A DNA stretch of 64,000 nucleotides. It comes from Macrostomum lignano (lineage: Eukaryota). The stretch's first letter is position 1. Each line of letters starts with the position of its first letter. The stretch lies in contig NIVC01001917.1 in NCBI GenBank assembly GCA_002269645.1, positions 62,001-126,000 on the forward strand. Reading direction: 5' to 3'. The notes under the pieces are model-generated. The model was not told where the DNA came from. It worked only from the letters and a program-made list of their open reading frames with translations, and searched no databases. Position numbers and translations under genes: made by a program. Positions 15,201 through 45,278 of the stretch are shown piece after piece.

Positions 15201-18200
15201 GATAATAGGAATTTCCATTTTCAAAATACAATGCACACCTTTTTGCAGCGCCTTTCATCTTCGTAGACTGCGTCCTCTCTGCAGTGCCAAGAAGTATTAA
15301 CACAAAAATAGGGTACAGATAAAAACGGTTAAAGTACTATAAGTAGTTGCGCAGTTTAACAAGCACGTACGGATTGTATTTTTCTGACAGATCTTCGACA
15401 ACATCAGTCACATCGAACATGGACAATTTTGGCACGTTAAACACCTGATCGCAGGTCTGTATGAACAGGGCCAGGTTGTCCTGAAATCATCATTATTTTT
15501 TGAGTTAAATTTCTATTTTTATCTGCTCTAGGATTTACATGCAATTAAAATGCAACTGATTTAAATGACGTTCCGTTTGTGGCTCCAGAAATCGCTTTAG
15601 AAATCCTAGCCTACCTCACAGCGGTGGATGAACCCTCCGATATGTAGCGTAATTAATTTCATAACAGTAAGAAAGTACAGAGGACTCCGACTCAAAACAG
15701 TAAGTAAATGCTTTTCGCCTAGCAGCTAAATTTTTTTCGCCCACGGATTAATTGCACACCTTACTAATAGTAAGGTTCATTTTTGTATATACTCGTAGAA
15801 GAACTCGTAGAAGGGGTTGTAGCCTAGTAGGGGTTGTAGCCTAGTAGGGGTTGTAGCCTAATATGGGTTGTAGCCTAATAGGGGTTGTAGCCTAGTAGGG
15901 GTTGTAGCCTAGTAGGGGTTGTAGCCTAGTATGGGTTGTAGCCTAATATGGGTTGTAGCCTAATATGGGTTGTAGCCTAATATGGGTTGTAGCCTAGTAG
16001 GGGTTGTAGCCTAATATGGGTTGTAGCCTAGTAGGGGTTGTAGCCTAGTAGGGGTTGTAGCCTAGTATGGGTTGTAGCCTAGTAGGGGTTGTAGCCTAAT
16101 ATGGGTTGTAGCCTAATATGGGTTGTAGCCTAGTAGGGGTTGTAGCCTAGTAGGGGTTCTAGCCTAGTGGTTAAAGCGTCGGCTTCACGAATTGAAGGTC
16201 AGGGGTTCGATTCCCGACCCAATCGAAATAATCTTTGTCCTTGAGCAAGACACTTAACTCTGCATTGCTTCAGTTCACCCAGCTGTAAAATGGGTGCCAG
16301 CATTAGCTGGGGTAATTGAGGCTGTATGGAGACCCCTTGGATTATACAGCCGTACGCAGCCTTCAGATGCGCCGCACATTTGCTGCGGCTGAGCTTTCGG
16401 TTGCACATCTGCTTACATGGGCAGGTGTTATCAATTATTATTATTATCCTAGAAGAAAATGTTAAGTATCAGATTAAACATGCCTTTTGAGGGAGTTATT
16501 TGTATAAATCACGAGGGCCTGAGGCCCGAGGGATTTATGAAAATAACTCCCGAAAAAGGCATGAGTAATCTCATATAAACCATAGACATAAGACTTTACG
16601 GGATATTATTGAATATTACCAAATAAAATCCCGGAGAACGCAAATATTGTCACGGAAAGTCTTTATTTCTATGGATTATAGATGTTATAAGTAATAGTTT
16701 ATCTTAAAATAGTCAACTCTATATTTATAGTAAGTGAATCCAAGTTTCCTTTCTAGAATTTTCTATAACAGACTTTTAATTATATATCTATGGTCTCCGA
16801 ATCCTAACCTGTAGTACAGCTAAGTTTTGTTTGAGCTGCGCCAGAGCTAAATTCCATGTTAACCTTCTTTTGCTATCTTTCTCAAGACTCTAAATAAACG
16901 CCTACTTATCACAATTAAATAAAGACTTTCTTAATAGAAAATTCATAACTCTGAAATTACATTTGACACGCTAGGCATCCCTGTCAGTTTTTTTCTAATT
17001 TGGCGAAAATGATGGGACCACCATGGAATACTGAATACCCTAAGATGGTTTACTCAGCACTATCTTTGGGCTAATTTGACTTGCTACTTCTGTTTCCAAT
17101 GGTATAAGCGCATACGTATTTGCATTATTTTTTGTCTTGAAATGAAAATATTTGGAGAAAATAATTGTTAGCAGGTTGTGTCAACTTTGACGAATTAAAA
17201 ATTCATTTTATCTATGGCCAAACTTTGCAGTGGCTCAAAATTCACTAGTGAAGCTAGTTGAATAAATAAATATTGCTTTTTACGCTCATGCTACTGAACA
17301 GAGTAGTTTTGCTAAATATAGTTTAGTATCTGTGGGGACCACTACCTGTCATTGAGACTAATTTACTTAAGAGCCAAGATTCAAGCGCGTTGGAGATTCA
17401 ATTTCGTGGAACAAGCGGAGGGGGGGGGCGGAGAGCGGAAGAAGATCCAATCCGACCAGAGTTCTGGTCGCCAATGGATACCAACAATTCATCTAAAATT
17501 GTACCGCATATAATTAAATGCATGCCTTGGCTCAACTATTCTGTAATAAAAAAGCAAAGCATTTTCTCATTATAAAATCGTAGAAATTAACAAAAAGAAA
17601 AGTTAGATTGGTTGTTATATAAGTCCAGTTAAGAACTGTAAAGAGTTATAATGTAACAACTGATTGCACTCTTCCAAAACGGTGAAAACGGTACTTATAT
17701 TAAGTACTAATAAAGTACACTAAGTTAGCAGTAGTACTAGCACTGATCCTATTTGCTAAAAAGTTATTGTTTTAAAACTTTTGTATTGAGCCACAGCAAT
17801 AATAAAAATCAATCATTATTGACAAAGAAAGCAGTTCTGAGACTTTTGTCAATAACAGAGAACTTCTTACCCTGATGCCGCGCACTGCTGCAGAACATTA
17901 TTAAATATAAATTAATGAATTTGTCAACTTGCCAAAATACATAAGAGATAAAGGCTCAGGAGTGAAAAAGGGTCAGGAGAGAAAAGGCTCAGGGGTCAGA
18001 GGGAAAAGGGGTCAGTCAGGGGGTCAGGAGAGAAAAGGCTCAGGGGTCAGAGGGAAAAGGGGTCAGTCAGGGGGTCAGGAGAGAAAAGGCTCGGGGGTCA
18101 GAGGGAAAAGGGGTCAGTCAGGGGGTCAGGAGAGAAAAGGGTCAGGGGGTCAGGAGAGAAAAGGGTCAGGGGTCAGAGGCAAAGGGGTCAGGAGAGAAAG

Positions 18201-20104
18201 TCTCAGGGGTCAGAGGGAAAAGGGGTCAGTCAGGAGGTCAGGAGAGAAAAGGCTCAGGGGTCAGAGGGAAAAGGGGTCAGTCAGGGGGTCAGGAGAGAAA
18301 AGGGTCAGGGGGTCAGGAGAGAAAAGGGTCAGGGGTCAGAGGCAAAGGGGTCAGGAGAGAAAGTCTCAGGGGTCAGAGGGAAAAGGGGTCAGTCAGGAGG
18401 TCAGGAGAGAAAAGGCTCAGGGGTCAGAGGGAAAAGGGGTCAGTCAGGGGGTCAGGAGAGAAAAGGGTCAGGGGGTCAGGAGAGAAAAGGGTCAGGGGTC
18501 AGAGGCAAAGGGGTCAGGAGAGAAAGTCTCAGGGGTCAGAGGGAAAAGGGGTCAGTCAGGAGGTCAGGAGAGAAAAGGCTCAGGGGTCAGAGGGAAAAGG
18601 GGTCAGTCAGGAGGTCAGGAGAGAAAAGTCTCAGGGGTCAGAGGGAAAAGGGGTCAGTCAGGGGGTCAGGAGAGAAAAGGCTCAGGGGTCAGAGGGAAAA
18701 GGGGTCAGTCAGGGGGTCAGGAGAGAAAAGGGTCAGGGGGTCAGGAGAGAAAAGGGTCAGGGGTCAGAGGCAAAGGGGTCAGGAGAGAAAGTCTCAGGGG
18801 TCAGAGGGAAAAGGGGTCAGTCAGGAGGTCAGGAGAGAAAAGGGTCAGGGGTCAGAGGGAAAAGGGGTCAGTCAGGAGGTCAGGAGAGAAAAGGCTCAGG
18901 GGTCAGAGGGAAAAGGGGTCAGTCAGGGGGTCAGGAGAGAAAAGGGTCAGGGGGTCAGGAGAGAAAAGGGTCAGGGGTCAGAGGCAAAGGGGTCAGGAGA
19001 GAAAGTCTCAGGGGTCAGAGGGAAAAGGGGTCAGGGGGTCAGGAGAGAAAAGGGTCAGGGTTCAGGAGAGAAAAGGGTCAGGGGTCAGGAAAGAAAAGGG
19101 TCAGGGGTCAGAGGCAAAGGGGTCAGGAGAGAAAAGGCTCAGGGGTCAGAGGGAAAAGGGGTCAGGGGGTCAGGAAAGAAAAGGGTCAGGGGTCAGAGGC
19201 AAAGGGGTCAGGAGAGAAAGTCTCAGGGGTCAGAGGGAAAAGGGGTCAGGGGGTCAGGAGAGAAAAGGGTCAGGGTTCAGGAGAGAAAAGGGTCAGGGGT
19301 CAGGAAAGAAAAGGGTCAGGGGTCAGAGGCAAAGGGGTCAGGAGAGAAAAGGCTCAGGGGTCAGAGGGAAAAGGGGTCAGGGGGTCAGGAGAAAAAAGGG
19401 TCAGAGGGTCAGAAGGGAAGTGTTAGAAACAAGAGAGGGGTCAGGATGCCAGACGGCAGAAGGTCAGAAAAGAATGTGTTGAAAAAGAGGGGGGGGGGGT
19501 GGCAAAAATGAAAATCGAATTTAAATCTGAGGAACCTGAGGAGTTGGATAATCAAAGTGGGGGGTGACAGGTGCCAGAGGTGAAGAGGGCCGAGAGGATT
19601 AGTATGGAAAAATGGATTTAATCCACATGCTGAAACATTAATAATTCTGTAGACAACAGCTCTAATTCTTATGCTACCATTTGCAGATTACGAAGTTAAA
19701 AAAGTTAACTCACCAAGCCGGCAATACGATTTTTCGATCGATTAATCTTCTTCACGCAGCCTGGGCGTAGAGCGTTCAATAGCCTGGATAAAATAAGGCA
19801 ATGCCTAATAGTTGTGAGGTTTGCGTGCGATGTTGCGCTTGACCGTGCTTGTGTTTGTTATCTTATATTCCTCCTATTTGGTCACGTGCTGTTTGTACAT
19901 GTGACACTGTACATTTTAACATTTTAACCTCAGATGCGTTCGCGATAGTAGGCCCGCAGGCAGCCAGGAGACAAGCAGTGATGCTCATTCCGCTGATCCC
20001 TGAGCACTCACTACTACTAATACTACTATTACTACTTCTAATACTACTATTACTACTTCTAATACTACTATTACTACTTCTAATACTACTATTACTACTT
20101 CGAA

Positions 20105-20644: not shown

Positions 20645-21260
20645 TTGAGGGGAATCTGAGGAGATGGAAAATCTAAAAAGCTGGGGAATGAGAGGCGCTG
20701 AGGAATCTAAGGAGCTGGGGAATTTGAAGAGCTGGGGAATCTGAGGAGCTGGGGAATATGAGGAGATGGAGAATCTGAGGAGCTGGGGAAGCTGAGGAGC
20801 TGGGGAATATGAGGAGATGGAGAATCTGAGGAGCTGGGGAAGCTGAGGAGCTGGGGAAGCTGAGGAGCTGGAGAAGCTGAGGTGCTTGGGAATCTGAGAA
20901 GCTGGGCAATCTGTGGAGTTTGGGAACCTGAGGAACTGGGGAATCTGATGGGGAACCTGAGGAACTGGGGAATCTGATGGGGAACCTGAGGAACTGGGGA
21001 ATCTGATGGGGAACCTGAAGAACTGGGGAATCTGAGAGGGAACCTGAGGAACTGGGGAATCTGAGAGGGAACCTGAGGAACTGGGGAATCTGATGGGAAA
21101 CCTGAGGAACTGGGGAATCTGATGGGAAACCTGAGGAACTGGGGAATCTGATGGAGAACCTGAGGAACTGGGGAATCTGATAGGGAACCTGAGGATTGAG
21201 GAACTGGGGAATCTGATAGGGAACCTGAGGATTGAGGAACTGGGGAATCTGAGAATCTAA
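20645..21260. repeat. G-rich minisatellites between LIMCH1 and SENP8 (degenerate ~20-bp array, then 28-bp gggaacctgaggaactggggaatctgat)
   Basis: Direct reading. Confidence 0.85.
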
Positions 21261-21529
21261 GAAAATGAGAACAAGAATTATGAGAATGTAGGGAGGTAGC
21301 TCACTTTAAATGATAACGTTATGTCAGCCAAAAATGCCATGTGTTGAAGGCAATGCAATTTTAAAAAACAATAGCAAGCATTAAGAAAGATCCTTTTGAC
21401 ACAAAATCAGAAAATGCATTTCAAGTTAAATTTCCGGCTAGCATTTTAAATAAAAACTAGATATTAATAGTTCTACAATGAAGGACAGATTGATTATTCT
21501 CGTAAGCTTATCTGTATCTGTACTGATGA

Positions 21530-21830
21530 ATCGCCGATCTGTACGGATAAATCGCGTATCTGTACTCATGAATCGCCGATCTGTACTCATGAATCGCCTA
21601 TCTGTACTCATGAATCGCCGATCTGTACTCATGAGTCGCCGATCTGTACTCATGAATCGCCTATTTGTACTCATGAATCGCCTATTTGTACTCATGAGTC
21701 GCCGATCTGTACTCATGAATCGCCTATTTGTACATATAAATCGCCTATTTGTACTCATGAATCGCCTATTTGTACTCATGAATCGCCTATTTGTACTCAT
21801 GAGTCGCCGATCTGTACACATAAACAATCG
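21530..21830. repeat. 21-bp minisatellite (atgaatcgcc(g/t)atctgtactc) just 3' of the SENP8 stop
   Basis: Direct reading. Confidence 0.9.
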
Positions 21831-21898
21831 ATCTACTCCGATAACAATATCGCCAATGACCCCAACCATAAGCCAGACAGGTTCTCAATCTCAACCAG

Positions 21899-23313
21899 CT
21901 AATCCTTATACACCGGCCTATCAGCAGCCAACTGCTCGATCAATCGCCGATATCTCGCCCGCAGCTCACGGACAGCCTCGCTGGCTCGACCGTCGCCGCC
22001 GGCCGACATCAACGGCCAATCGTCCGGGCTGGAGGCGTCGACCAGCTGTTCAGCGTACAGCAGAACGAATGCGCCGCAGTCGGAGCTGTTGGCCTGCCTA
22101 GCGCAGCCGGCCGCCTCTCGGACAGTCGGCAATGCGATTGGACAGTCGCACAGGGCCGGGTGCAGAGCGGCGGCCAGGTCAGCAGCCGAGTGCCGATTGT
22201 TGCCGGACAGGCTGTCGAAATGCAGAGCGTCAACAATTCTACAGGCTCCGTTGGTGGCGTTGCAATTGGCAACGTAGCGGATGGCCAGCAGAGACCAGTG
22301 AGTGCCGCCTGGCTGGTCGGGCGAATCGCTGTCGCTAACCACGCCTAGGAGGCCTCTAGTGTTGGACGAGCCTGCGGCTGTTTTAAATAATAGCGCGTGT
22401 ACTTTACAGTGACTAGGCTGGGTACTCCGAAATTCACAACTTCTCAAACTTCACAACCCCCAAATTCACAACCCCCAAAACTTCACAAACCCGTAAATTC
22501 ACAAAGGCCTTAATTCACAAACCCGTAAATTCACAAAGGCCTTAATTCACAAACCCGTAAATTCACAAAGGCCTTAATTCACAAACCGGTAAATTCACAA
22601 AGGCCTTAATTCACAAACCCGTAAATTCACAAAGGCCTTAATTCACAAACCCGTAAATTCACAAAGGCCTTAATTCACAAACCGGTAAATTCACAAAGGC
22701 CTTAATTCACAAACCCGTAAATTCATAAACCCGTAAATTCACAAAGGCCTTAATTCACAAACCCGTAAATTCATAAACCCGTAAATTCACAAAGGCCTTA
22801 ATTCACAACCCCGTAAATTCATAAAGCCGTAAATTCACAAACCCGTAAATTCACAACCCCCTAAATTTCAAACCTATAAATTCACAAACCTCTAAGTTCA
22901 CAACCCCCAAAATTCACAAACCACAAAATTCACAACCTCCAAAACTCTCCAACCCCTAAAACTCACAATATGTGAAGTGAATTAACTAGATGTCAAGACA
23001 AAAATACAGATGAATCGATACAAAACGATAGCATTGAATTCAGGCTTGTATTAGCAAGCAACTCACAAGCTCTAAGATCTCGCTGAGCCAGCAGTTCAAC
23101 CGCCTGTCCAGTAAGTTTAACAGCCTGGCACACAGTGGGATCTAACAGAGTGATCCGTTGAGTTCCATTACTGGATCCGCGACATTTGGTGCGATCAATA
23201 TATTCTAATGCAAAACTGATGATGTTGTCATTTAGCCACATGCCATCGTGCAATGTGTCATAATCAGATTGGGTGACAAGTGTGTCATAGTAGCTTACTA
23301 GCTGTCTTGGCAT
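21899..23313 (-). CDS. SENP8: SENP8/NEDP1 NEDD8-specific protease (Ulp1/C48 family), 2 exons
   Basis: Exon 1 23313-23067 (MPRQLVSYYDTLVTQSDYDTLHDGMWLNDNIISFALEY..., donor GTGAGT, phase 1). Exon 2 22377-21899. Catalytic motifs GGTHWSLL, HFDS and QANSSDCG are intact. Confidence 0.92.
22440..22965. repeat. 16/32-bp minisatellite (aattcacaaacccgta / aattcacaaaggcctt) in the SENP8 intron
   Basis: Direct reading. Confidence 0.9.
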
Positions 23314-25194
23314 ACTCTGAAGTTGACAAGGTTTGACAACTGAATGATATTGCAATATGTAGTTAATTGCACTATACAAGTACACAGTCAAGGTTTCTGC
23401 TGGAGTTATAAGTACAGCCTATAGGATGCTTATGCCAAGCAACAAAATTTAACACAGGAAAAACATTACTTATTATTCATTTCAAGGCTCAACCATTGCT
23501 GTTAATGAAAGGCCAAAAAAGCATATGGTCACTGTGCTATGCATCAGTGGCATTACAAAGGTTCAAGGATTAAAGGAAGTTTTGGCTGAAGGCACTATTT
23601 CTGACTGTGATACTGATGGTGCCACGTGCCATCAATTTAGCTAACAAGTATGACCAAAGATGCAGTCCAAATGCAGAATCCAATGGTAAAGCTATTGATG
23701 GTGGATCTAAACAAGGGTTTATTGTAGATTTAAAAGGTTGATTTATTACAAGAAAAAATGGTTAAATCGATTAAATTAAGTTTGAACAAAATCGGTTAAG
23801 CCATTTTTGCTAAAATCAATCACATACCTACCTACCTACCTAGATACCAACAGACCATTTTAAGTACATTGGAAGTTTTGCTAACACCTACACAAGCAAT
23901 GTCATGCTGGTATCTGCAACCTGCCTATGCCTTTTGTTAAACATTGTGAATTTTCTACTATGTTTATTATTGTGCATTTCCCACAAATGTTGTGCAGTCA
24001 TTGTTACTTATATTCTTTACACTATGCTAGTTACATTTTGAATAAATTTGTTGCCTATTATGAATAAAACTAATTTGTTTTATACTATTAGTTGCATTGT
24101 TTTTTCTTTAGCACTGTCCTTCTAGAATAGGCAACAAGTAATTAACAGTATTATTTAGCAATATCTTTATTGACTGCAATGTTTTACACAGCTTTCTTTG
24201 TGTTTCAGTTTTGGTCTAACTCTATTTTTATATTAAAATACTCATTAAAATCAAGCTTATCTGTCATGTAGTAATTTTTAAATACAAATTATGTAGCAAT
24301 CTAAATTATACAAATGACTTCAAATAATATTTCTTCATTCTTTTAACTTCACAGACTTTTCTATAGGCAAGTTTAGTTTCTGCTATTATATTTTAACTTG
24401 TATCTAATAAGAGCAGCCATTCAGTTGTACAAAACAATATACTTGTGGCATGCAGGGAACAACCTGTGCAGTCATCTGCAGACCAAAGGAAGACTAAAAG
24501 GTTGCCATAAATCAAACAACAACTTGAAATATCTTGCACAAAATCTTACAAGATCTTAAGAAATTCTTATGATATCTTACAAAATTACAAGAAAAATTAA
24601 AATTTAATTAAATTATAAAATAAAATTAAAATTACTTAGAAAAAAATAGATAACTTTCTTCAATTTTTCTTGCAAAATCCTGTCAGATCATATTAGATCT
24701 GCAGAAAAAATTTCAAGTTAGGCAAAAAGTATAATAATATTAAAGTAAGATTTGCTGAGTTTGCTCAAGTCATTATTAATCTTGATATAATAGGTGGAGC
24801 TTGGCATCACCCCTATTTCTAATAGGACATACACTAGTTGATAGCTGTTACAATTGTTGATACAACACCACCTTTTCCATTTGTTTCTCTCTGATGCAAC
24901 TTTCTTAGTCATTTCTTTAGTTTATCTGCACTTATCTTTGTTTACTTTGTTTTCTCCCTATTGGTCTAGTTCAGTCTTGTTATTTTTATTTCTCTCCCTC
25001 ATTGCCTTCTGATTGGCTCTTCAACCTTGCCTCTTTTAGTTGTATATTCTACCCCTTCTTTTATTTTCACTCCCCTGTCTTATAATTATACTTGTTTTGG
25101 GCCCAGTGCTACACTTACTGTTCTCTTTCAATTCCAATAAAGTAGTCTCTTATTTTCTCCACACTTATACTATAATTATATATTTACTGTCTCA

Positions 25195-26900
25195 ATGGCT
25201 ACTGCACTTTCTTGCAATGTTGCTTTTTCCATGGAATTTGAGAATGAATACCAGAAAATTTTGCTTAATGACACTTACTTAAATTGTTATGGAATTGAGA
25301 AAGACAAGTTGATAAAAGAAGGCAAAGAAGAAAAAGCCATAGAAACAAAAGAAGTTGGTAATGTACCAGAGTGGCAGTTGGTTCAGGCTAGAATAGATGC
25401 TATGCCAAATAAAGCTGAATTTTTGGGAATACTAGGGGTTTGCCAAGATTGGATGCCTCCAACTTTAGCTAATGGAAACAAAGAGGAATTTCTGAGTCTA
25501 TATCTCACTAATGGAATTATTGCAAGTATGAAGACCTGGACAAATTGTAGGGCATAGAAGATTTTTGAGGAGTGCATTAATGCACTAGTTGTCAAAGCTA
25601 GCAAAGAACTGGAAAGATTGCACAAATGATAAGGTGAGGAAGCTATTCAGGATTGTTCTGTTGATAGGCATAGACAAAAAGCCAAATATCAGAAGTTACT
25701 AGAGCCAAGACCCTCTATTACTCCTTTCTGTCCATGCCCAATGCCTTCTTAAGAGATAGATTCAAGCAGCTGCTTTATTGCCTTTGTTTCTATGACTGCA
25801 TAGATGTCTAGGAAAGGCCATTGGCCAAAATCTAGCCATTTTTATACTAGCTGCAACAAGTATGCAGCAACAACTATATGCCATGCTAGCATTTTTCTAT
25901 TAACAAAATTCTAGTCTTGTACAAAGGGTGCCTCATATTCAAGCAGTATATCCCAACTAAGAAGAGCAGGTATGGGGTCAAACTTTACTACCTATGTGAG
26001 TTAAAGACTGGCTACTTATAGAATTTAGCAATTCACTCCACAGAACATGCAAATGTATATTTTGGACTAGGACTCAACTGTAGCAGCCTTTCTGTTGATA
26101 AGCAAAATTTGGCCAAGCTATACTGTGAACTCTAACATTAACTACAATGTATTTATAGATAGCTGGTTAATGTTGCATTGGCTGCTAGCAAATAGAACTT
26201 GGCTCATAGACCAAGCAATCAATGAATCCCACTATTGCTGCAGCAACTACAATTGCAACCAACTGCGGCAGCTTTTGTGAGGAATGGCAAGGTGTTTGCT
26301 TGTAAGTTTGTGGACAAGAAGAGCAGTAAGACAAAGTCTATATATCTCCTAGACACTGCTAGGCAGGCTGCCTATGTGAACTTACCATGTGTCTATTGGA
26401 AAGGCAAGCAGTAGGTGGTTTTAAAGCCATTGACAATGGTCATATACTCAAAGAGCATAGATGGCATAGACTATATGGATTAAGCAACAAACCCTTACCT
26501 GGCCAGTTGCTTGTTTTAGAAACTTGGATTTTGCTTATTACTGCTTCTGGTCTAGAATTTTTAGATTGTCTACCATTAGCATGGAGGTACCAAGACTTGT
26601 GGCATTTCTAGGAAAAGCAATCAGTATCCTGGAGGAGGAGGAGACTAGCAGAGGCAAGTGCCATTTCACTATCAGGGTAGGCCATCCCATAGCAATTAGA
26701 CCTATAGGTGATGGCCTTATAGTATAACATTTGCTAACCAAAGCTCTATTGAAATGCTACATATGTTTGGCTACACAATCAATGCCATATATCAAACAAG
26801 AACCAAATTGAAAACAGTACCCTGATTGTCTAGGAATGCTAGCACTTTGAATAAGCCAGTATTTTAGGAATAGGCATGGCCAACCACATTGGCTATTATA
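25195..26900 (+). pseudogene. Decayed piggyBac (PGBD4-like) transposase
   Basis: Manual translation across stops and shifts: LLIGIDKKPNIRSY*SQDPL; RDRFKQLLYCL; SINKILVLYKGCLIFKQYIPTKKSRYGVKLYYLCELKTGYL*N (cf. IDESLLLFKGRL.FKQYIP.KR.RFG.KLY.LCES.TGY); NVFIDSW; KP...YSKSIDGIDYMD*; Cys-rich tail YPDCLGMLAL*...YFRNRH. Possible right end is a triplicated caaaaggttaa at ~27820-27870. Left end not found. Confidence 0.88.
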
Positions 26901-28249
26901 AACATTCTTATCATTATATATTTTCTCTTACATCCCTGTATGGCTTTGCCTTATTTATTTCTAACCTTTTCTTTGATCTCGCAGTCGTCCTTTAGCTTCT
27001 ATCCCCTTATAAAAAATTCAAATAATTTTTAGGGAATACCCAAACAAAGTGGGTTTCTATTTTTATGGTGTCTTTCTATCCATATTTCAATATTTTCTTC
27101 TCCTATTCCTATTTTATTTTTACTTTCACTTGTTTCAAGTTAATATAAAGTTAGTGCCTTCTATTTTAGAGACAAAAGTGATTGGAAATGACAGTGCAAC
27201 ACAGTTGTAGTTTTAACCAAAATATAGTTTTAAGTTTTTTTGTGGCAGTAAAAGTTGGCCTTTATAACTTTGCAAGGTCTAGTTTCTAATAGTAGGTTGT
27301 AGTGCTTATTTTAGCTTGCCCCATATAAATTTTTTCTAGATCTGCCCTTGCTAACCACTAGGCTATAATATCTACCTATAACTTATATATTATTTCTATA
27401 AAATATATCTGCCAAATATTTTTGGCAGATAATTTGGTTGCTTTTTCATCTTCCTTGCTAATACTATCTTTACTAGAAAAGTAATATGGATAAACATTAG
27501 TTTAAATACTATATTACAAGCTTAAAACTAGAAACTTCAGAAAAAGCTTAAAATTTATACTTAAAATAAACTTTTTGAAATGAATTTGAAATGGCTATAG
27601 TTATACCACTTTGCAAAATTTTCTATTAAGATAATATAATTATAATAGAGTCTGGACTAGACAAAGCATAGCATACTGGCACTATGCACTAGGCCTAAGA
27701 TTTATTGTTTAGTAGTAGTAGTAGTAGTAGTAAGTTGGCTCAGGCAAGAAGCCTGTTTGGCCAGTATATTTCTGTGTATTTAAGATATTTTAGCATTAGT
27801 TGTTTAATTATGATTAAGTTCAAAAGGTTAAATTTGTTCAAAAGGTTAAATTTGTTCAAAAGGTTAAATTTTTACATGAGTTACAATGTGAGTTACAATA
27901 TTTGTAAAATTATTAAGGTATTTGAAAGAGCGTTTTTTTTGTAAAAAGATGTAGTATTTTGCAAGCGCGCAATATTTCAAAGCGTGAAAAACGAACATGA
28001 ACATACTTTGAAAGAACTTTACGTTTAACAAATAACAACGATTTAAATAGGTATTAGATAGGAAACTAATTAAATACTAATTAAATGCTGATAAATAATG
28101 AATAAAGACGATTTAAATAGGTATTAGATGGGAAACTAATTAAATACTAATTAAATGCTAATTAAATACAATAGGAAATTAAAAAGACAGTAAATGAATA
28201 AACAAATGAAAAGCAGATTTATTACACTGCTGATATATTTGTTTCAGTT

Positions 28250-28730
28250 TGCATAACTGTTTTAGCTATTCATGACTTCATATATTTTAGCTACACCAGT
28301 GAGCTCTTTTCTGACTCTTTTCATTTGTAGCATATCCTAACTTGTGTACTTGCTTGTCATTTAAGAGGTACTGATAGAAGTATTTTTTCTGATCTTTTCA
28401 GTTTGTGGACATTCGGTCAAGTAGTGTAGGATATCGGAACCATTTCTCGCTCCACACAGTCTACATGCTTCATGAGATAAAATGTTGGGTGTAATTTCGC
28501 ATTTCAGTTTTAGGAAGGTTGTTAGGAATTTTTTGTTTCTAAAAGTGCATGGAAAGTAATCTGAAAGGTCGGGCCTGCAGATTTTTTTGTAGAGATAGGC
28601 GTTTTTGTAGAGTTTAATATGTTGCTGATTCTCTAGCTTTTGGCTAAGTTCTCTTTCTCTGTGTATCTTGAGGTGCTTTTTCACTATTTCTCGTTATTAA
28701 AGCTTTGGGAAAGTTTTCTACGAATCCAAA
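28250..28730 (-). mobile_element. 3' fragment of a non-LTR (LINE) retrotransposon ORF2
   Basis: ORF 28361-28684 carries the C-terminal CCHC-type motif CRLCG...DILHYLTECP typical of LINE ORF2 ends, followed by AT-rich 3' sequence. Confidence 0.7.
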
Positions 28731-29679
28731 ATTTAGGGCGTTTTTTGTATAAAATACTTTAATTAATTTATTGTAGTTTTAATATATTTTTGTTTTTTAG
28801 TAAAATTATTGTAGTTATGCAGCAATTAAGTGCTAATTTAAAAAAATTGTTTTTAGATTTGTTTTAGCTAAGATATTATTAAAACCGCGTTATTTCAATT
28901 TTTGACGCGCTTTTGAATCGACTTCTAGATTAGCGTGCTTTTCAATCATTATCCCTGATAAAGACCTGGTAAAAATTAAACATCATTAAACAACCTATAA
29001 TATAACGCAATCACAGTCGTTTGATCTGTCAGCCTTATAAAAACATGTGAGTTTTCTCTCAAAAAACATCATGAGTTGTATGATGAACTCTAATTTATCT
29101 AAATATACTAAATCTCTCATATTAGTTTGTTTGTATGTCCATGACGCTCTACAGATTGCAATTCTTGACCAATTTTAATTGCGTTTTCGCCAAAATTTAG
29201 ATACTATAGTTGTTGAAATCCGCAGACTTTGAAACTGCTGAATTCGAATCAATGGAGCTATTTTTGCATCTGTCTAACTCTAAAGCATGCGTTGGCAAAC
29301 GCTGGCTTCTGGCTTCTGCCAGCTCTCTCTACGTCCCTCAAGTCCTTTGAAACTTCTCTCCTCTTTGCTCTCTTCTCTCTTCTCTTTCCTCTCTCCTTTC
29401 TTTTCCCATCTTATCTATCATATCATCTCGTCTTCTCTCCTCTCTCTCTTCTCTTTGCTCACTGCTCTCTTTTCTCTTCTCTTTTCTCACTCCTCTACCA
29501 AGGTTTAGTTTACAGCTACAGCTATTTCATATCAGAAATTGGATATGTCGAAAAGGATGTTAAATACATGTAAAAACTGTCATATGCCTCTCACTAAATT
29601 TATTTTCAGAGAAATGACGGGTGAAACTTTATAATATCTACTTCTGGTGACTGATATATTTCTAGATTGTTTCGTAATC

Positions 29680-32600
29680 ATGTCGAGTCCAGTGCATGAG
29701 AAGAGTGAAAGTCTAAACAATAATGACGAGGATTTGAGTGAAAGTTTATTGAATACGGAAGAAGAAGCAATTACTGAAGCGTCAAAGGATAGTGTGCCTA
29801 AGCCAATATTCCAGGGCGATCGGCTTTCAGCGGAAGGCACCATTGTTGGACACCGCAAGAAAGAAGTGTCCTTCTTAGCAACATCGAATGAACCAAAAAT
29901 TAAGGTCGTCGATGGTAAGTATCGGTTGGTATAGTGCAGTGTAGTCAATAAGCATAATTTATTCATTTTATTAGTGTTTTAGGCACTGCAACAATAGAAA
30001 TCTTTTATATCTACGCGCTATCTAACAAATTATACTTAAAAATATTTTCTGCATTTTTTCATAGTTTCGCGTCTCAAATCAGCCTTAAATTGAGTTCAAG
30101 TCCGATGCAGCGGTAGCCTTGCTTTGTGCACAAACCATTTGAATCACACGTACGGACTACACACAGATCAAAACTAAAAACAACTATCGTCAAAATAATA
30201 ACTTCATCATAAAGGTATAACCCCTCATAATCATAAAGGTATAACCCCTCATAATCATAAAGGTATAACCCCTCATAATCATAAAGGTATAACCCCTCAT
30301 AATCATGGATCATCCTGTTCCAATCTAAGGCTTCATTCCCCTAAATATTTGCAGCACTCGACTGTCTCAACTATATACAAGAGGGCACAGAGATGTTCAA
30401 AATTAGGTCGAACGGCCGGCACTACAAGCGCCACTTCTACCTTGACCTGGAGGCCATGGAAATTCGTTGGTGGCCATCGTCTAAGAAGCCGCACAAAGCT
30501 GCAGGTGAACTTGTCAACCGCACGAAGACCCCCCTTCCCCTCATTTAGCGGTTTTGTTGTTTTTCTTTCTAAAAATACCGCTTTTTATTTTCCTGACGGA
30601 GCCAGCAGCAACAGCTATATGGAAAACAGTTTAGCGTGCATGAGGCCGCGTGGCGGTGTCAACAGGATGCTATAAGATATATGGGAATCGATATTGCAGG
30701 GCCAGCCACGCCCCAGCAGCCAACGCCCGGTGCGTCTCCTGTAGGCGCCACCGATCTTGGCCAGTCTGAGTACCTCCTTCCCGCATCATCATGGACAAAC
30801 TCTGCTCGGCTGCGCTGACACACACACACACACCAGACACACACACACCACACTGTAGATACTCGCGGGTGGCGGGTTTGGGTAACTCAGAATACCTATT
30901 CCCCAATCCCCTATTTTGTGTGTGTGTGTGTGTGTGTGTGTTTGTGCATTAGGCATTTCTTGGGACAAGCGTGTATAAACTGACCCGTGCTATTAGGACC
31001 AAAAATGTGTTGGGCCAGGCCCAATATGTGCGTCCCGACACTTCTAAAAATCAAGGCTACTAAATTAAAAAAATATTCGTTCGAACCGTCGTTCGATTCC
31101 CTTTTCAGAAACCAAACAACAGAAACCATATTTCTTACGATACATGAGTAATTTAGCGATTAACAATGTCCCAACAGGTTAGGAAAATCATGCAAAACCA
31201 TTTTTGGTTCAATAGAACAATTGGGACTTTAATCATACTTTCATGTCTCGTCTTTTTATCATGTAATATTCTAAAAGGTCTACTTAAAGTAAAGCTGAAT
31301 GCTTAATAAGGAGCCTGTCTAAAGCTGAAGAGATCAGATATCATTTGGCAGCGTGGTCGTGGCTACATAAGTTTTCCAGGATGTTTTGCTGTAAGAACTG
31401 TTAGTTTATCTCATATACACTCTAATCTATAAAATTCTACATTCTAATTGTAAAATTTTCAACTCTGAAGTATACTAAAATTGGGACAATGTTCAACACT
31501 ACTAACACTTAGTAACTTTATCGCTCCACTACAGGTGTATTGTTTCTATTGTTCCAACGTACTCTTCTCCCTATTTCACCTATCAGCGATTCGCGAGCAT
31601 ATTAATATAGAGCTTAAAATTTTAACAACCACAATTAAAATTCTTGCATTCTTTTTCTTACGGAGAGATTACAGAGCAAAATAAGCCCCTAGGCCTCAAT
31701 CCCTCTCTCACAAAACGTTTTGGCCAGGCTAAACAGCTTGGTAAAGAACTTTGTCCCAGCTTCGATCGATAATCGAGCTAACGCGCGTGTGTACATTCTG
31801 AAGTGTGGGGACACGCACAAATAAAACCCAATCAACCTTCTCTCCAGGCCAATTGAGTGTACATTCAGAAGTGTTAGGACAGCCAAGCCACCCCTATTTA
31901 GAGCCCCCACAAACCTCTTTCAAAGGCCAATCGGAAGAACCAAACTAAATCTAGATTGAGACAATTTTGTACAATACATTGACTTCCCGATACTATTCTA
32001 TTTACTATAAGCCATTCTGAATTTGATCTAGTCAAAATACTCGTAGCTACATACTTAAAACAATGCGGCAGAAGGCCGCTAAGAAGCTGAAGGCCCAAAG
32101 AAAAGTAAGAAAGAGGCCACTAGAGGTTAATGGCCATGCCAACCGAAGAGTGGAAGTGAAATTTGATAAAAGGCATCCCGCCTACGGCCAGACCAACGTT
32201 GTATATCTAAGCGACCTAAAGTTTAAAGGTCAACTATGCCATGGAACACGAGTCGTGATGCAGTGGAAGGGAAAGGAGTGGAGCGGCACGGTGACTAACA
32301 TGTAAGTGACATTAAAAAAACTATATCTTCCTATACTAGTCTTATTGATTTCTAAATAACACAATTACGTGCACACTGTACTTTGCGTAAATTAACACAA
32401 ATATGTAATTTACTGCAGATACATTGATGCAGACCCACTACCGTTTGAAGCCGTTACTAAAGGGCTACCAACTCTAACAGGTATGTATGCCTATGTTAAA
32501 CATTCAATTACTTATCCACGAAGAGTATACTCATAAAGACTATCAATCTTACTTCTTACTTATCAATGCCCGAAAAAATAGCAATGATGTTTAGGTGAAA

Positions 32601-35600
32601 AGAGATCCCTTAAATCAATTTTCAATTTTATAGAGGAACAATTAGCAAATCGAAACGTCTCATATAGTGGCCGTGCGTTTGAAAAATACTACATTGGTAA
32701 GAAAAAACATAATACTCTAAATCTTAAATGTACCTCCGTAAAAGCCTTGAAATTCCCTTGAAAGCGAAAACTAAAACTTTGTAGAGATGGAAGAAAAGCA
32801 ATTTCGCAGCATCTTCAAGCTTAAAAAACATCGATCCAATGCAGGTACTTTGACTGCAGAAACTGTATTTCACATAGAAAAGCACATATTAACTATATTA
32901 TTTACACATCAAACGTAGAAAAGAAAAGCACAAAAAAAACATTTTTAGTGGCAACGGTCGGACAGAAAAACAAACACATTGCACTGGTATATACAAGCAA
33001 AGCTCAAATGTGGAGCAATCATTGGGACAACATTGTGCGGATGTGATGTTTGAGGCATTTATTGGGACGCACTTAATGGGACATGGAGTCTGTTATTTTT
33101 AACGCGGCTCTGGCTGTGACTAGAAAATGGTTCTTGTAGTTGAGCCAGCAAAGCATAGCTCTCTCTAAATAAACAAAACAGAATAGTAGCTTTCTAAGTA
33201 GCTCGAGTTTGAGTTTGGGAATCTGTGAAACTTTGCTCAGCCAATGATTACGTTCATGAAGTGTGTCTACACTACACAACTCCTTTCACACAGCTTCTGA
33301 AGTCGAGAGTTCCGCTGACGCGTCGCGGATTGAGCCCAACTTGAATGCGGTCTCCGCAAGCACAGACGCCACTGGTTCAAGCCTTGTCGCTGAACTAGCT
33401 AGTGCCATTCAGCCTGCTCAACAGCAGCCTCCAGCCGGCTTCAGCCAGACAGTTAGTCAGCTCCCAAGTGGTGCTACAGAAAGTCATTCAAGCGAAAGTG
33501 CAAATGCTAAGAGGAAACGGCGATCTGCTCAAGGTGAGCACTGCATGAGCATTGCTTTGTCTGCATGAAGGTACATGTACTTTAAGCGGGAGTGTTTGGG
33601 AGCCTTGGCAAATAAGGCAATGGATATTTTGGGCGGGCATCGGCAGGACAGAAAAACACATACACTTGGGCACTTATTGGGACAACATTGTGCGGATGTG
33701 ATGTTTGAGGCATTTATTGGGACGCACTTAATGGGACATGGAGTCTGTTATTTTTAACGCGGCTCTGGCTGTGACTAGAAAATGGTTCTTGTAGTTGAGC
33801 CAGCAAAGCATAGCTCTCTCTAAATAAACAAAACAGAATAGTAGCTTTCTAAGTAGCTCGAGTTTGAGTTTGGGAATCTGTGAAACTTTGCTCAGCCAAT
33901 GATTACGTTCATGAAGTGTGTCTACACTACACAACTCCTTTGACACAGCTTCTGAAGTCGAGAGTTCCGCTGACGCGTCGCGGATTGAGCCCAACTTGAA
34001 TGCGGTCTCCGCAAGCACAGACGCCACTGGTTCAAGCCTTGTCGCTGAACTAGCTAGTGCCATTCCGCCTGCTCAACAGCAGCCTCCAGCCGGCTTCAGC
34101 CAGACAGTTAGTCAGCTCCCAAGTGGTGCTACAGAAAGTCATTCAAGCGAAAGTGCAAATGCTAAGAGGAAACGGCGATCTGCTCAAGGTGAGCACTGCA
34201 TGAGCATTGCTTTGTCTGCATGAAGGTACATGTACTTTAAGCGGGAGTGTTTGGGAGCCTTGGCAAATAAGGCAATGGATATTTTGGGCGGGCATCGGCA
34301 GGACAGAAAAACACATACACTTGGGCACTTATTGGGACAACATTGTGCGGATGTGATGTTTGAGGCATTTATTGGGACGCACTTAATGGGACATGGAGTC
34401 TGTTATTTTTAACGCGGCTCTGGCTGTGACTAGAAAATGGTTCTTGTAGTTGAGCCAGCAAAGCATAGCTCTCTCTAAATAAACAAAACAGAATAGTAGC
34501 TTTCTAAGTAGCTCGAGTTTGAGTTTGGGAATCTGTGAAACTTTGCTCAGCCAATGATTACGTTCATGAAGTGTGTCTACACTACACAACTCCTTTGACA
34601 CAGCTTCTGAAGTCGAGAGTTCCGCTGACGCGTCGCGGATTGAGCCCAACTTGAATGCGGTCTCCGCAAGCACAGACGCCACTGGTTCAAGCCTTGTCGC
34701 TGAACTAGCTAGTGCCATTCCGCCTGCTCAACAGCAGCCTCCAGCCGGCTTCAGCCAGACAGTTAGTCAGCTCCCAAGTGGTGCTACAGAAAGTCATTCA
34801 AGCGAAAGTGCAAATGCTAAGAGGAAACGGCGATCTGCTCAAGGTGAGCACTGCATGAGCATTGCTTTGTCTGCATGAAGGTACATGTACTTTAAGCGGG
34901 AGTGTTTGGGAGCCTTGGCAAATAAGGCAATGGATATTTTGGGCGGGCATCGGCAGGACAGAAAAACACATACACTTGGGCACTTATTGGGACAACATTG
35001 TGCGGATGTGATGTTTGAGGCATTTATTGGGACGCACTTAATGGGACATGGAGTCTGTTATTTTTAACGCGGCTCTGGCTGTGACTAGAAAATGGTTCTT
35101 GTAGTTGAGCCAGCAAAGCATAGCTCTCTCTAAATAAACAAAACAGAATAGTAGCTTTCTAAGTAGCTCGAGTTTGAGTTTGGGAATCTGTGAAACTTTG
35201 CTCAGCCAATGATTACGTTCATGAAGTGTGTCTACACTACACAACTCCTTTGACACAGCTTCTGAAGTCGAGAGTTCCGCTGACGCGTCGCGGATTGAGC
35301 CCAACTTGAATGCGGTCTCCGCAAGCACAGACGCCACTGGTTCAAGCCTTGTCGCTGAACTAGCTAGTGCCATTCCGCCTGCTCAACAGCAGCCTCCAGC
35401 CGGCTTCAGCCAGACAGTTAGTCAGCTCCCAAGTGGTGCTACAGAAAGTCATTCAAGCGAAAGTGCAAATGCTAAGAGGAAACGGCGATCTGCTCAAGGT
35501 GAGCACTGCATGAGCATTGCTTTGTCTGCATGAAGGTACATGTACTTTAAGCGGGAGTGTTTGGGAGCCTTGGCAAATAAGGCAATGGATATTTTGGGCG

Positions 35601-44600: not shown

Positions 44601-45231
44601 GACAGCCCTATACTATAGTGTGTGCTGGCTTCTGCTTCTGCTATAGTGTGGTTCATTTCCGCATCCTTTTACGTAGCATTCTGTGGGTCCGAATAGCTGA
44701 CATGTACCTTTTGAGTAATTCTAGTGATTGTGTCATAATCAATAAAGTACATTTTTATGAACAGTGGAGTTTCGCTACAGAATTGTTTTTTCCCAGTGGC
44801 ACTAAATGTAGCAAATTTTGTTTATTCAGATCGTAAAATTTTTTTGATATGTGTCAATGTCGTTTGTTTTCGATAACCTTAAAGTCCCTTGCCATTTACC
44901 ATCCTGTCTTCTATAATCTATGATCGCTGAAATTATCTGGTGAAATTTGACGCGCTGATATTATTGCCTTAAGTGGAATTCAGCAAGACACCAGGGTTTT
45001 TTAATTCTGTTTTAGACAAGTATACATGTACAATCTGTTGTGAGTTCAATGCACCTCGAAAAATGCTTTCCAACTGTTTTCAGTAAGCCAAAAGCATGTT
45101 GTCAATAAAAATCGATTTGGTGGGTTGAAAATTGCCTGTGTGGGGACGTGTGTGTGTGTGATTTTTCGTGTGTCGAAGCAGTCCCAATATGTGCAAGCTT
45201 TTGCACACTTGGCCAATAAGTGCCTCGTGCA

Positions 45232-45278
<47 letters not shown>

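What the first reader, a model, noticed from the sequence alone, without database searches (positions are those of the whole stretch)
25195..26900. RIP-like CpA/TpG->TpA hypermutation of a piggyBac transposase in an animal
Against remembered PGBD consensus motifs, the lesions are mostly C->T on either strand and often not at CpG. Examples: W TGG->TAG (SY*S, YL*N); Q CAA/CAG->TAA/TAG (MD*, V*N); IDE->INK (GAC GAA->AAC AAA); MGG->IDG; Cys TGC/TGT->TAC/TAT and Pro CCA->CTA in the Cys tail; apparent double hits CGG->TAG (KI*P). Established: CpA->TpA transitions in repeats are the hallmark of fungal RIP. Inference: a repeat-directed mutagenic defence, or heavy non-CpG methylation, in a flatworm-like genome. 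Other TEs here (YR element, Tc1, Pao) are untouched, so it would be family- or age-specific. Ancestral codons are inferred, not observed.
Basis: partly seen in the sequence, partly recalled or inferred. Interest (0 to 1): 0.8.

Follow-up and report, generated by a model that had tools for sequence, protein, structure and literature searches.

The report
C-to-T hypermutated piggyBac relic, flatworm
A dead piggyBac transposon in the flatworm Macrostomum lignano lies in a sharply bounded 4.7-kb block that has lost nearly all its CpGs and about a quarter of its other cytosines to C-to-T changes. This looks like a methylation-type mutational mark on a silenced domain rather than fungal-style RIP.

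Summary
Window 24,780-27,296 is a decayed piggyBac, with the CDS relic at 25,231-26,892. The window is Macrostomum lignano contig NIVC01001917.1.

Compared with an intact copy from the same genome (L001):
- There are 363 C>T/G>A changes, 46 reverse transitions and 143 transversions.
- 135 of 137 CpGs are lost, yet 60% of the C>T changes are at non-CpG sites.
- The per-site C>T rate depends on the 3' neighbour: CpG .53, CpA .31, CpT .24, CpC .13. CAG is hot and CAA is cold.
- Outgroups place about 85% of the polarisable changes on the window lineage.
- Satellite arrays and young TEs in the same genome are transversion-rich (170:63:264).

So this is not CpG decay plus ordinary drift.

The "RIP-like, family-specific" reading is only partly right:
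- The mutated zone is a sharp block, 23,248-27,930, and it includes 2.1 kb of non-piggyBac DNA.
- A sister locus carries the same block. Its duplicated flanks and the young, near-identical TEs are untouched.
- Non-CpG C>T continued in both sister copies after they split (46 C>T against 6 T>C).
- A second block with no piggyBac lies in another contig.

Best reading: a DNMT-type (methylated) domain that loses cytosines at CpG and CpH. This is inferred; I have no methylation data.

The parts
23248..27930 (.). CpG-free, AT-rich hypermutated block with sharp edges. It holds 6 CpGs where about 130 are expected; GC is 0.21-0.42.
   Evidence: CpG positions and 250-bp profile. The sequence is complex, not satellite. 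The same block is present in sister locus L084.
24780..27296 (+). Whole decayed piggyBac element, homologous end to end with the intact element at L001:2578-5108.
   Evidence: blastn and MAFFT give 72% identity, with nearly all differences being C>T/G>A. The left end was extended by a transition-tolerant alignment.
24776..24779 (+). TTAA abutting the left end of the element, presumed to be the piggyBac target site. No TTAA is preserved at the right end.
   Evidence: Read directly from the sequence.
25231..26892 (+). Transposase CDS relic (DDE_Tnp_1_7 plus Cys-rich tail). It has 17 stop codons at aligned codons and 13 indels, 9 of them frameshifting.
   Evidence: Pfam hit, homologues, and the codon-by-codon comparison with L001:3001-4731.
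23248..24779 (.). Left part of the block. It has no piggyBac homology, no Pfam-recognisable coding relic seen by eye, 3 CpGs where about 35 are expected, and elevated divergence between the sister copies.
27297..27930 (.). Right part of the block. It has no piggyBac homology and no CpGs. TAG/CTA o/e is 1.71, TpA/ApT is 1.31, and the substrate index is 1.05.
21899..23391 (-). Flanking Ulp1/C48-peptidase gene with normal CpG. Its 5' exon abuts the left edge of the block. It was used as the handle to fetch the sister locus.
   Evidence: ORFs. P0016/P0017 are M. lignano BOX15_Mlig008367g1 and Mlig000642g3, with Peptidase_C48.
28361..28684 (-). ORF just right of the block, in AT-rich DNA with normal CpG. 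I read it as the 3' end of a non-LTR retrotransposon ORF2 because of its C-terminal Cys/His motif. It marks the right-hand boundary.
   Evidence: ORF translation. The LINE assignment is by eye from the motif and was not tested. CpG profile.

Best explanation
The piggyBac copy and about 2 kb of adjoining DNA form one discrete chromatin domain. That domain is, or long was, a target of cytosine-5 methylation by the DNMT1/DNMT3 machinery that M. lignano retains.

Within the domain, cytosines are lost as C>T on both strands. CpG sites went first and went completely. CpA and CpT sites followed more slowly, with CAG, CAC and CAT hot, CAA cold and CpC nearly spared.

The process is chronic rather than a single burst. 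It was under way before the locus was duplicated, and it continued independently in both sister copies after all the CpGs had gone.

The domain stops at an active gene's 5' end on one side. On the other side it stops at what looks like a younger insertion.

Shown here: the spectrum, the sequence context, the direction of change, the block boundaries, persistence after duplication, and the sparing of young repeats.

Inferred: that the cause is 5mC (CpG plus CpH) followed by deamination, and that the domain is epigenetically defined.
For: 1. The spectrum is C>T 363: T>C 46: tv 143. It is strand-symmetric (170/193) and uniform along coding and non-coding parts.
2. The context is set by the 3' side: +1 is G .54 > A .31 > T .24 > C .13, and +2 is G > C~T >> A (CAA 6/70 against other CAN 101/277, p=2e-6). 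The 5' neighbour has only a weak effect. That pattern is DNMT-like, not AID/APOBEC-like.
3. CpG fates are TG 45, CA 44 and TA 25. This fits CpG loss followed by CpA>TpA.
4. Outgroups polarise the changes 87:15 onto the relic lineage.
5. The block edges are sharp, and 2.1 kb of non-piggyBac DNA lies inside.
6. Private changes since the sister loci split: C>T 46 (CpA 25, CpT 19, CpC 1, CpG 1), T>C 6 and tv 13. CpA+CpT against CpC gives p=5e-4.
7. Background controls from the same genome are transversion-rich. Satellite arrays give 170:63:264. Young TE copies give 5:2:13 (tests).
8. Non-CpG transitions between the sister copies are 5.5 times more frequent per G/C site in the relic than in the right flank.
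9. A second independent block, L095:14,804-17,018, shows a more advanced form of the same composition: CpG o/e .06, CA/TG .79, TAG/CTA 2.14, CC/GG 1.61.
10. Literature: M. lignano keeps DNMT1 and DNMT3 and has low global 5mC. The genomic pattern of methylation is unknown in free-living flatworms (PMC11292947, PMC9246332). Non-CpG methylation is reported as the dominant context in the tapeworm Taenia solium (PMC10658182).
Against: - I have no methylation data for this locus, so the link to 5mC is inferred.
- A non-CpG rate about 12 times the CpC rate would need unusually heavy CpH methylation in the germline or stem cells of an animal.
- Between the sister copies, transversions are also about 4-6 times higher inside the block than outside it. 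The ts/tv ratio is about the same inside (1.9) and outside (2.2). Pure 5mC deamination does not predict this.
- Divergence inside the block is patchy.
- Only two independent blocks were seen in about 180 kb.
- The match to the flank preference of mammalian DNMT3 enzymes is from memory and was not tested.
Confidence: 0.5

Rival explanations
1. Ordinary ageing. The block is simply the oldest neutral DNA in the neighbourhood, and M. lignano has a genome-wide mutation bias of C>T at CpG, CpA and CpT. The sharp edges then arise because everything around the block is younger (satellites, TE insertions) or under selection (genes).
For: - A presumed LINE 3' end abuts the right edge and a gene abuts the left edge.
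- The ts/tv ratio between the sister loci is similar inside (1.9) and outside (2.2) the block, and transversions are also elevated inside.
- Indels and transversions of about 3-6% show that the copy really is old.
Against: - Polarised background spectra from the same genome are transversion-rich, and their per-site C>T:T>C ratio is only 3.4, against 13-15 in the block.
- The rates measured in the block imply an equilibrium GC of about 7%. No complex sequence in the 180 kb sampled falls below about 21%.
- The AT-rich right flank (GC .22-.37) keeps CpG at o/e .85.
- Sister-copy divergence is 4-5 times higher in the block even though it has fewer G/C targets.
Confidence: 0.2
2. A true RIP analogue. 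A programmed, DNMT-family (RID-like) or deaminase-dependent mutagenic defence recognises the element and actively converts C to T, leaking into the flanks, in the germline or stem cells.
For: - The changes are G:C>A:T dominated, with CpA>TpA the leading non-CpG class, and 13 of the 17 stop codons arise that way.
- The context dependence is on the 3' side, as expected for a DNMT-family enzyme.
- Block-right and the second block reach or come close to RIP-type index values: TpA/ApT 1.31-1.33 and substrate index 1.05-1.07.
- In fungi RIP is known to leak into adjacent unique DNA (my own knowledge).
- A published review notes that RIP-like use of methylation could exist outside fungi (PMC9246332).
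Against: - Homology is not the trigger. The duplicated flanks (about 99% identical over more than 8 kb) and the young multi-copy TEs (99.5-99.9% identical) show no C>T excess or CpG loss.
- CpG, not CpA, is the preferred target. CpA dominance is 0.40, computed from the counts.
- There are no strand-coordinated tracts (runs test z=-0.6).
- Mutation continued slowly in both copies rather than as a burst.
- No RID-like gene was looked for, because the tools could not do it.
Confidence: 0.12
3. Methylation-independent hypermutability of a heterochromatic or late-replicating domain. Examples would be poor uracil or mismatch repair access, or error-prone repair. These would raise all substitution classes, with deamination products dominating.
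For: - Both transitions and transversions are about 4-6 times higher in the block between the sister loci.
- At 11 sites that were formerly CpG, CAG or CTN, one sister has T and the other has A. This is what alternative processing of the same lesion would give.
Against: - It does not by itself explain the total loss of CpG.
- It does not explain the strong +1/+2 context, with CpC and CAA spared.
- An AID/APOBEC-type ssDNA deaminase is unlikely, because the 5' neighbour has only a weak effect and there are no strand runs.
Confidence: 0.1

Closest known systems
Methylation-driven CpG decay of silenced transposons in animals (5mC deamination, CpG>TpG/CpA)
   Same: CpG is lost almost completely, with TpG/CpA products (TG 45, CA 44). 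The change is strand-symmetric and domain-like over a dead TE. The host retains DNMT1 and DNMT3.
   Different: 60% of the C>T changes are at non-CpG sites. C>T at CpA and CpT runs at about 12 times the CpC rate and continues after all CpGs have gone. The rest of the genome sampled, young TEs included, has near-normal CpG.
Repeat-induced point mutation (RIP) of ascomycete fungi (RID/Masc1, DIM-2)
   Same: G:C>A:T transitions inactivate a transposon. CpA>TpA is prominent and creates TAG/TAA stops. The context dependence is on the 3' side. The mutation spills into adjoining DNA. The result is AT-rich blocks with sharp borders.
   Different: The trigger is not sequence duplication. CpG is preferred over CpA. 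The rate is slow and chronic rather than a premeiotic burst. There are no single-strand tracts. The host is an animal and no RID-like gene is known.
Non-CpG (CpH) methylation by DNMT3-type enzymes (vertebrate neurons, oocytes and ES cells) and plant CHG/CHH methylation
   Same: The order of preference is CpG > CpA > CpT > CpC, the +2 base has an influence, and CAA is the poorest CAN site. The match to DNMT3 flank preferences is from my memory.
   Different: In those systems the mark is mostly somatic or reprogrammed, and no comparable germline non-CpG mutational footprint on TEs is known to me. Methylation itself was not observed here.
AID/APOBEC editing of retroelements
   Same: C>T/G>A hypermutation of a mobile element, producing stop codons.
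   Different: That editing acts on single-stranded cDNA, so it is strand-asymmetric, clustered and governed by the 5' neighbour. Here the target is a DNA transposon plus its flanks, the changes are symmetric and unclustered, and the context is on the 3' side.

Membership tests
piggyBac (PB) DNA transposon | DDE_Tnp_1_7 transposase domain | tested here: met
   Pfam PF13843 at E=4.8e-18 on the stop-masked translation. The relic is 62% identical at the amino-acid level and 72% at the nucleotide level to an intact M. lignano piggyBac that carries PF13843 and PF13842.
piggyBac (PB) DNA transposon | TTAA target-site duplication and terminal inverted repeats | tested here: inconclusive
   TTAA is present at the left end (24,776-24,779) but is not recognisable at the right end. 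The intact relative has TTAA on the right and imperfect inverted ends of about 14 nt (9 of 14 bases match). In the window the ends are too mutated to judge.
RIP (fungal repeat-induced point mutation) | Mutations are almost exclusively G:C>A:T transitions | tested here: inconclusive
   66% of all substitutions are C>T/G>A (363 of 552), rising to 78% at codon positions 1+2. There are also 143 transversions and 46 reverse transitions, as expected from added age.
RIP (fungal repeat-induced point mutation) | Triggered by, and confined to, duplicated sequence | tested here: not met
   The duplicated flanks (about 99% identical) and the young multi-copy TEs (99.5-99.9% identical) are unmutated. The block contains 2.1 kb with no detectable repeat homology.
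RIP (fungal repeat-induced point mutation) | CpA dominance, and RIP indices of TpA/ApT >0.89 with (CpA+TpG)/(ApC+GpT) <1.03 | tested here: not met
   In the relic CpG (.53) exceeds CpA (.31), and CpA dominance is 0.40. TpA/ApT is 0.98-1.05 (met), but the substrate index is 1.47-1.69 (not met). Block-right and the L095 block come close, at 1.05-1.07.
RIP (fungal repeat-induced point mutation) | Long single-strand tracts of C>T or G>A from individual rounds | tested here: not met
   Runs test: 183 runs observed against 188.9 expected, z=-0.6. The long runs coincide with purine-rich or C-rich stretches.
RIP (fungal repeat-induced point mutation) | RID/Masc1 or DIM-2 dependence, with premeiotic timing | not testable with these tools
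   No proteome search of M. lignano for DNMT4/RID-like genes was possible. The literature reports only DNMT1, DNMT3 and DNMT2 (PMC9246332, PMC11292947).
5mC-deamination decay of a methylated domain | CpG depletion with a reciprocal TpG/CpA excess, symmetric on both strands | tested here: met
   CpG o/e is 0.02-0.04 and CA/TG o/e is 1.19-1.30. CpG fates are TG 45, CA 44 and TA 25. C>T 170 against G>A 193.
5mC-deamination decay of a methylated domain | The host has maintenance and de novo cytosine-5 DNA methyltransferases | not tested
   Taken from the literature only: M. lignano retains DNMT1 and DNMT3 and has low 5mC (PMC11292947 and PMC9246332, citing Wasik et al. 2015, which I could not read).
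5mC-deamination decay of a methylated domain | The locus is actually methylated (CpG and CpH) in the germline or stem cells | not testable with these tools
   No methylome data were available.
AID/APOBEC-type editing | 5'-neighbour motif (TC, CC or WRC) and strand-coordinated clusters | tested here: not met
   For non-CpG sites the -1 position gives p=0.34, while +1 gives p=2e-6 and +2 gives p=6e-5. There is no strand clustering.

The most novel reading that the evidence does not exclude
Macrostomum lignano has a programmed, DNMT-family-dependent mutagenic silencing system. It would be an animal counterpart of fungal RIP, but targeted by chromatin or small-RNA marks rather than by homology. 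It would progressively destroy selected TE-containing domains through C>T at CpG and CpH.
Probability: 0.12. Interest if true: 0.9.

Novelty: new variant of a known kind. Interest (0 to 1): 0.6.

Why it matters
How DNA methylation is distributed in free-living flatworms is unknown, even though M. lignano keeps DNMT1 and DNMT3. RIP remains the only known case of a cell exploiting cytosine methylation as a mutagen (PMC9246332).

The data point to discrete, sharply bounded blocks that lose every CpG and then keep losing CpA and CpT cytosines at about 12 times the CpC rate. If that is right, this animal confines methylation, or a related activity, to a few per cent of its genome, including non-CpG sites, and that activity permanently erodes silenced transposons.

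This gives concrete loci and a sequence signature (CpG-free, TAG/CTA-rich, CC/GG-retaining) for reading the methylome and for DNMT knock-downs in a tractable, transgenic flatworm model. It also warns annotators that old TEs in this genome may be invisible to similarity searches.

Tried and rejected
1. A second copy inside the window. None was found by blastn or by a transition-tolerant Smith-Waterman search.
2. Clear TIRs by inverted-repeat search. None was convincing.
3. A JGI metagenome scan with a piggyBac family profile. It returned only distant piggyBacs (25-40% identity) from unrelated samples, which were of no use for a consensus.
4. An exact look-up of the relic's first 120-aa ORF. It is not on record.
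5. The P0005-family piggyBac copies as an 'old but unmutated' control. They turned out to be 99.5% identical, so they gave only 11 polarised changes. A first count of 79 was an alignment artefact and was discarded (corrected).
6. The six YR copies as a control. They are 99.9% identical and gave only 9 changes.
7. Pfam on six-frame translations of the second block. No hits. The window's own block flanks were inspected only by eye.
8. Strand-clustering. A context-based simulation suggested fewer runs than expected, but that null over-counts alternation at CpG dyads. The plain runs test shows nothing, so I rejected it as evidence.
9. The Wasik et al. 2015 genome paper could not be read.
10. APOBEC-like editing, ADAR-type editing (only 19 A>G), GC enrichment on the intact lineage, and horizontal or organellar origin were each considered and rejected on the spectrum, the polarisation and the homology.
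Full report
**What is there.** Translating window 25,195-26,900 gives a piggyBac transposase broken across three frames. The stop-masked translation matches Pfam DDE_Tnp_1_7 at E=4.8e-18.

- Its best relative is an intact 576-aa protein of Macrostomum lignano, BOX15_Mlig002331g1 (P0001), at 62% identity. The gene for P0001 is L001:3001-4731 in GCA_002269645.1.
- The window is itself M. lignano. Its 890-aa ORF is 100% identical to BOX15_Mlig014457g5. Window 11,899-33,286 is identical to NIVC01001917.1:73,899-95,286, so contig coordinate = window coordinate + 62,000.
- DNA homology with the intact element covers the whole transposon: window about 24,780-27,296 against L001 2,578-5,108 at 72% identity. 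TTAA lies at 24,776-24,779.
- The CDS relic is 25,231-26,892. It has 17 stops at aligned codons: CAG>TAG x8, TGG>TAG x4, and one each of CAG>TAA, CGG>TAG, TCG>TAA, GGC>TGA and TGC>TGA. It also has 13 indels, 9 of them frameshifting.

**The spectrum.** The intact CDS is 56% GC with 121 CpGs (o/e 0.91). The relic is about 37-38% GC with 1-3 CpGs.

- Over 2,327 aligned columns there are 363 C>T/G>A changes (170/193), 46 T>C/A>G and 143 transversions.
- The per-site C>T rate, classed by the 3' neighbour in the intact copy, is CpG .53, CpA .31, CpT .24 and CpC .13. The three non-CpG classes differ with p=2e-6.
- Of 137 aligned CpGs, 45 became TG, 44 CA, 25 TA and 21 something else; 2 survive.
- So 40% of the C>T changes are CpG decay and 60% are non-CpG.
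- Direction was checked against two outgroup piggyBac CDSs (L002 and L003, GC .51, CpG o/e about 1). Where both outgroups agree, 87 C/T-type differences side with the intact copy and 15 with the relic.
- At codon positions 1+2 the intact lineage is constrained. There the relic shows non-CpG C>T at 22.9% per site, T>C at 1.5% and transversions at 2-3.5%.

**Context and anatomy of the process.**
- The determinants lie 3' of the cytosine. At +1 the order is G>A>T>C. At +2 it is G>C~T>>A (CAG .40, CAC .32, CAT .31, CAA .09; CAA against the other CAN sites p=2e-6).
- The 5' neighbour barely matters outside the CpG dyad.
- The changes are strand-symmetric. They are uniform from the 5' end to the 3' end, non-coding ends included. 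They show no strand-coordinated runs (z=-0.6).
- A 3' context, symmetry and lack of clustering argue against an AID/APOBEC-type ssDNA deaminase. They fit a DNMT-type recognition of CpG and CpH.

**The mutated zone is a block, not an element.**
- CpGs vanish abruptly between 23,248 and 27,930: 6 are observed where about 130 are expected. CpG density is normal immediately outside, including in the AT-rich right flank (Poisson P~1e-47).
- The block therefore includes about 1.5 kb to the left and 0.6 kb to the right with no homology to the intact element's flanks or to anything else I hold.
- The left edge abuts the 5' exon of a Ulp1/C48-peptidase gene on the minus strand.
- The right edge abuts an ORF that I read, by its Cys/His motif only, as a LINE ORF2 3' end.
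- All other long CpG-free stretches in the window are satellite arrays whose repeat units lack CpG.

**A sister locus dates the process.** Using the C48 gene as a handle, I fetched L084 (NIVC01003393.1). It is a paralogous, homeologous or haplotypic copy of window 20.7-30.9 kb, and it carries the same relic and the same block.

| Comparison with the intact copy as outgroup | C>T | T>C | tv |
|---|---|---|---|
| Shared by both sister copies | 353 | 45 | 152 |
| Private to one sister copy | 46 | 6 | 13 |

- A further 13 sites differ in all three sequences.
- The private C>T changes fall at CpA 25, CpT 19, CpC 1 and CpG 1. Few CpGs were left by then. CpA+CpT against CpC gives p=5e-4.
- Most of the damage therefore predates the split. 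Non-CpG C>T then continued independently in both copies.
- Per site and per lineage, the post-split rates are about 3% at CpA/CpT, about 0.26% at CpC, 0.19% for T>C and about 0.3-0.5% for transversions.
- Between the sister copies, non-CpG transitions per G/C site are 5.5 times higher in the relic than in the right flank (p=3e-9).

**Controls from the same genome.**
- Variants within 22 satellite arrays of the window, polarised by the array consensus, give C>T:T>C:tv = 170:63:264 (76:28:109 counted as unique events). The per-site C>T/T>C ratio is 3.4, and CpG is only about 1.3-2 times hotter than other contexts.
- Private changes in young TE copies (six YR copies and three P0005-family piggyBacs) give 5:2:13.
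- The block's spectrum differs from these with p of about 1e-23 to 1e-25 for the changes shared by both copies, and p of about 6e-8 to 5e-4 for the private changes.
- The rates seen in the block imply an equilibrium GC near 7%. Nothing complex in the 180 kb sampled falls below about 21% GC.
- A genome-wide neutral bias is therefore an unlikely full explanation. It is not excluded, because I had no old, CpG-normal TE family to compare.

**Why this is not RIP in the strict sense.**
- CpG is the first target, not CpA. CpA dominance is 0.40.
- The relic's substrate index, (CpA+TpG)/(ApC+GpT), is 1.47-1.69, whereas RIPed DNA would be at or below 1.03.
- Sequence duplication does not trigger it. The duplicated flanks are about 99% identical with normal CpG. 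A YR element of at least 12 kb is present in six copies at 99.9% identity, and a second piggyBac family at 99.5%; both are unmutated.
- The process is chronic.
- The resemblance is still real. 13 of the 17 stops arise by CpA>TpA. The two most eroded stretches approach RIP-type indices:

| Stretch | CpG o/e | CA/TG o/e | TAG/CTA o/e | CC/GG o/e | TpA/ApT | Substrate index |
|---|---|---|---|---|---|---|
| Block-right, 27,297-27,930 | 0.00 | 0.94 | 1.71 | 1.20 | 1.31 | 1.05 |
| Second block, L095:14,804-17,018 | 0.06 | 0.79 | 2.14 | 1.61 | 1.33 | 1.07 |

**A second block.** L095:14,804-17,018 (NIVC01001014.1:257,086-259,300) lies beside, just outside, the annotated span of a grainyhead-like gene. 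It is 2.2 kb of complex, sharply bounded sequence. It has no Pfam hit and no piggyBac homology. The phenomenon is therefore not family-specific. It takes up roughly 4% of the sequence I sampled.

**Mechanism.** The best-supported reading (about 0.5) is a discrete methylated domain. M. lignano retains DNMT1 and DNMT3 and has low global 5mC, and the pattern of methylation is unknown in free-living flatworms (PMC11292947, PMC9246332).

- Low global 5mC would fit methylation being confined to a few per cent of the genome.
- Full CpG loss, a CpA>CpT>>CpC order with a +2 effect, strand symmetry, domain edges at an active gene's 5' end, and slow persistence all fit 5mC deamination at CpG and CpH.
- The similarity to DNMT3 flank preferences is from my memory and was not tested.
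- None of this shows methylation directly.

Rivals are ordinary ageing under a genome-wide bias (0.2), a true RIP-like active system (0.12), and methylation-independent hypermutability of a heterochromatic domain (0.1).

**Unexplained.**
- Between the sister copies, transversions are also about 4-6 times higher in the block than outside. Divergence within the block is patchy: 0.4% at 24,000-24,250 and about 1% at 26,500-27,750, against 4-7% elsewhere. Gene-conversion mosaicism or error-prone processing of deaminated bases could explain this.
- At 11 sites that were formerly CpG, CAG or CTN, one sister has T and the other has A. This suggests independent hits on very hot cytosines, in which case part of the 'shared' C>T could be parallel change.
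- I cannot explain why CAA is cold.

**Verdict.** The RIP interpretation is partly supported: it works somewhat like RIP but is not a member of that family. The non-CpG methylation alternative is favoured but unproven. Novelty: a new variant of a known kind. Interest 0.6.

Noticed in passing
window 20,751-30,946 against L084 (NIVC01003393.1:9,576-30,964, reverse strand): A second copy of this whole neighbourhood exists in the assembly. It is about 99% identical in the flanks and 93-96% identical in the CpG-free block, and divergence inside the block is patchy. Whether it is a homeologue, a segmental duplicate or an uncollapsed haplotype is undetermined.
   Followed up: partly
window 30,947-45,232: A 14,286-bp insertion sits inside a (GT)n microsatellite and is absent from the sister locus, which shows the empty site. 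Five other copies elsewhere in the genome are 99.9% identical over at least 12 kb, so this is a very young, large mobile element.
   Followed up: partly
L095:14,804-17,018 (NIVC01001014.1:257,086-259,300): A second sharply bounded, complex CpG-free block lies beside, just outside, the annotated span of a grainyhead-like (CP2/GRHL) gene. GC is .30, TAG/CTA o/e is 2.14, CC/GG o/e is 1.61 and TpA/ApT is 1.33. It has no Pfam hit and no relative among the loci I hold.
   Followed up: partly
window 24,791-26,512 (11 sites, e.g. 25,445, 25,693, 26,027, 26,213, 26,512): At cytosines that are CpG, CAG or CTN in the intact element, the window copy and its sister differ by T against A. In 9 of the 11 cases it is the window copy that carries the transversion.
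   Followed up: partly
whole window, e.g. 2,877-3,352, 6,600-8,557, 10,211-11,130, 13,368-15,164, 17,966-19,419, 43,087-43,943, 46,003-46,697, 57,065-58,020, 63,035-63,594: More than 20 unrelated tandem satellite arrays (units of 5-214 bp) occupy a large share of the 64 kb. Many of the long 'ORFs' in the window are just these arrays.
   Followed up: partly
window 21,899-23,391 (minus strand): A Ulp1/C48-peptidase-like gene has two coding blocks separated by a 32/48/96-bp satellite at 22,430-22,968, apparently an intron. The C-terminal exon is 65% GC. Its 5' end coincides with the left edge of the block.
   Followed up: partly
L084 reverse-strand coordinates 17,485-18,594, opposite window ~29,423: The sister locus carries a 1.1-kb insertion (GC .44, 33 CpGs) that the window lacks.
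   Followed up: no
window 58,129-58,590 (+): An ORF whose translation looks like the C2 domain of a phospholipase C-type protein (judged by eye), presumably a host gene exon.
   Followed up: no
L002 and L003 (JGI metagenome 3300040801): Two complete piggyBac elements of about 2.4 kb, the closest non-M. lignano relatives (54-59% aa identity to P0001), sit in an environmental metagenome. This implies DNA from a related flatworm or other animal in that sample.
   Followed up: no
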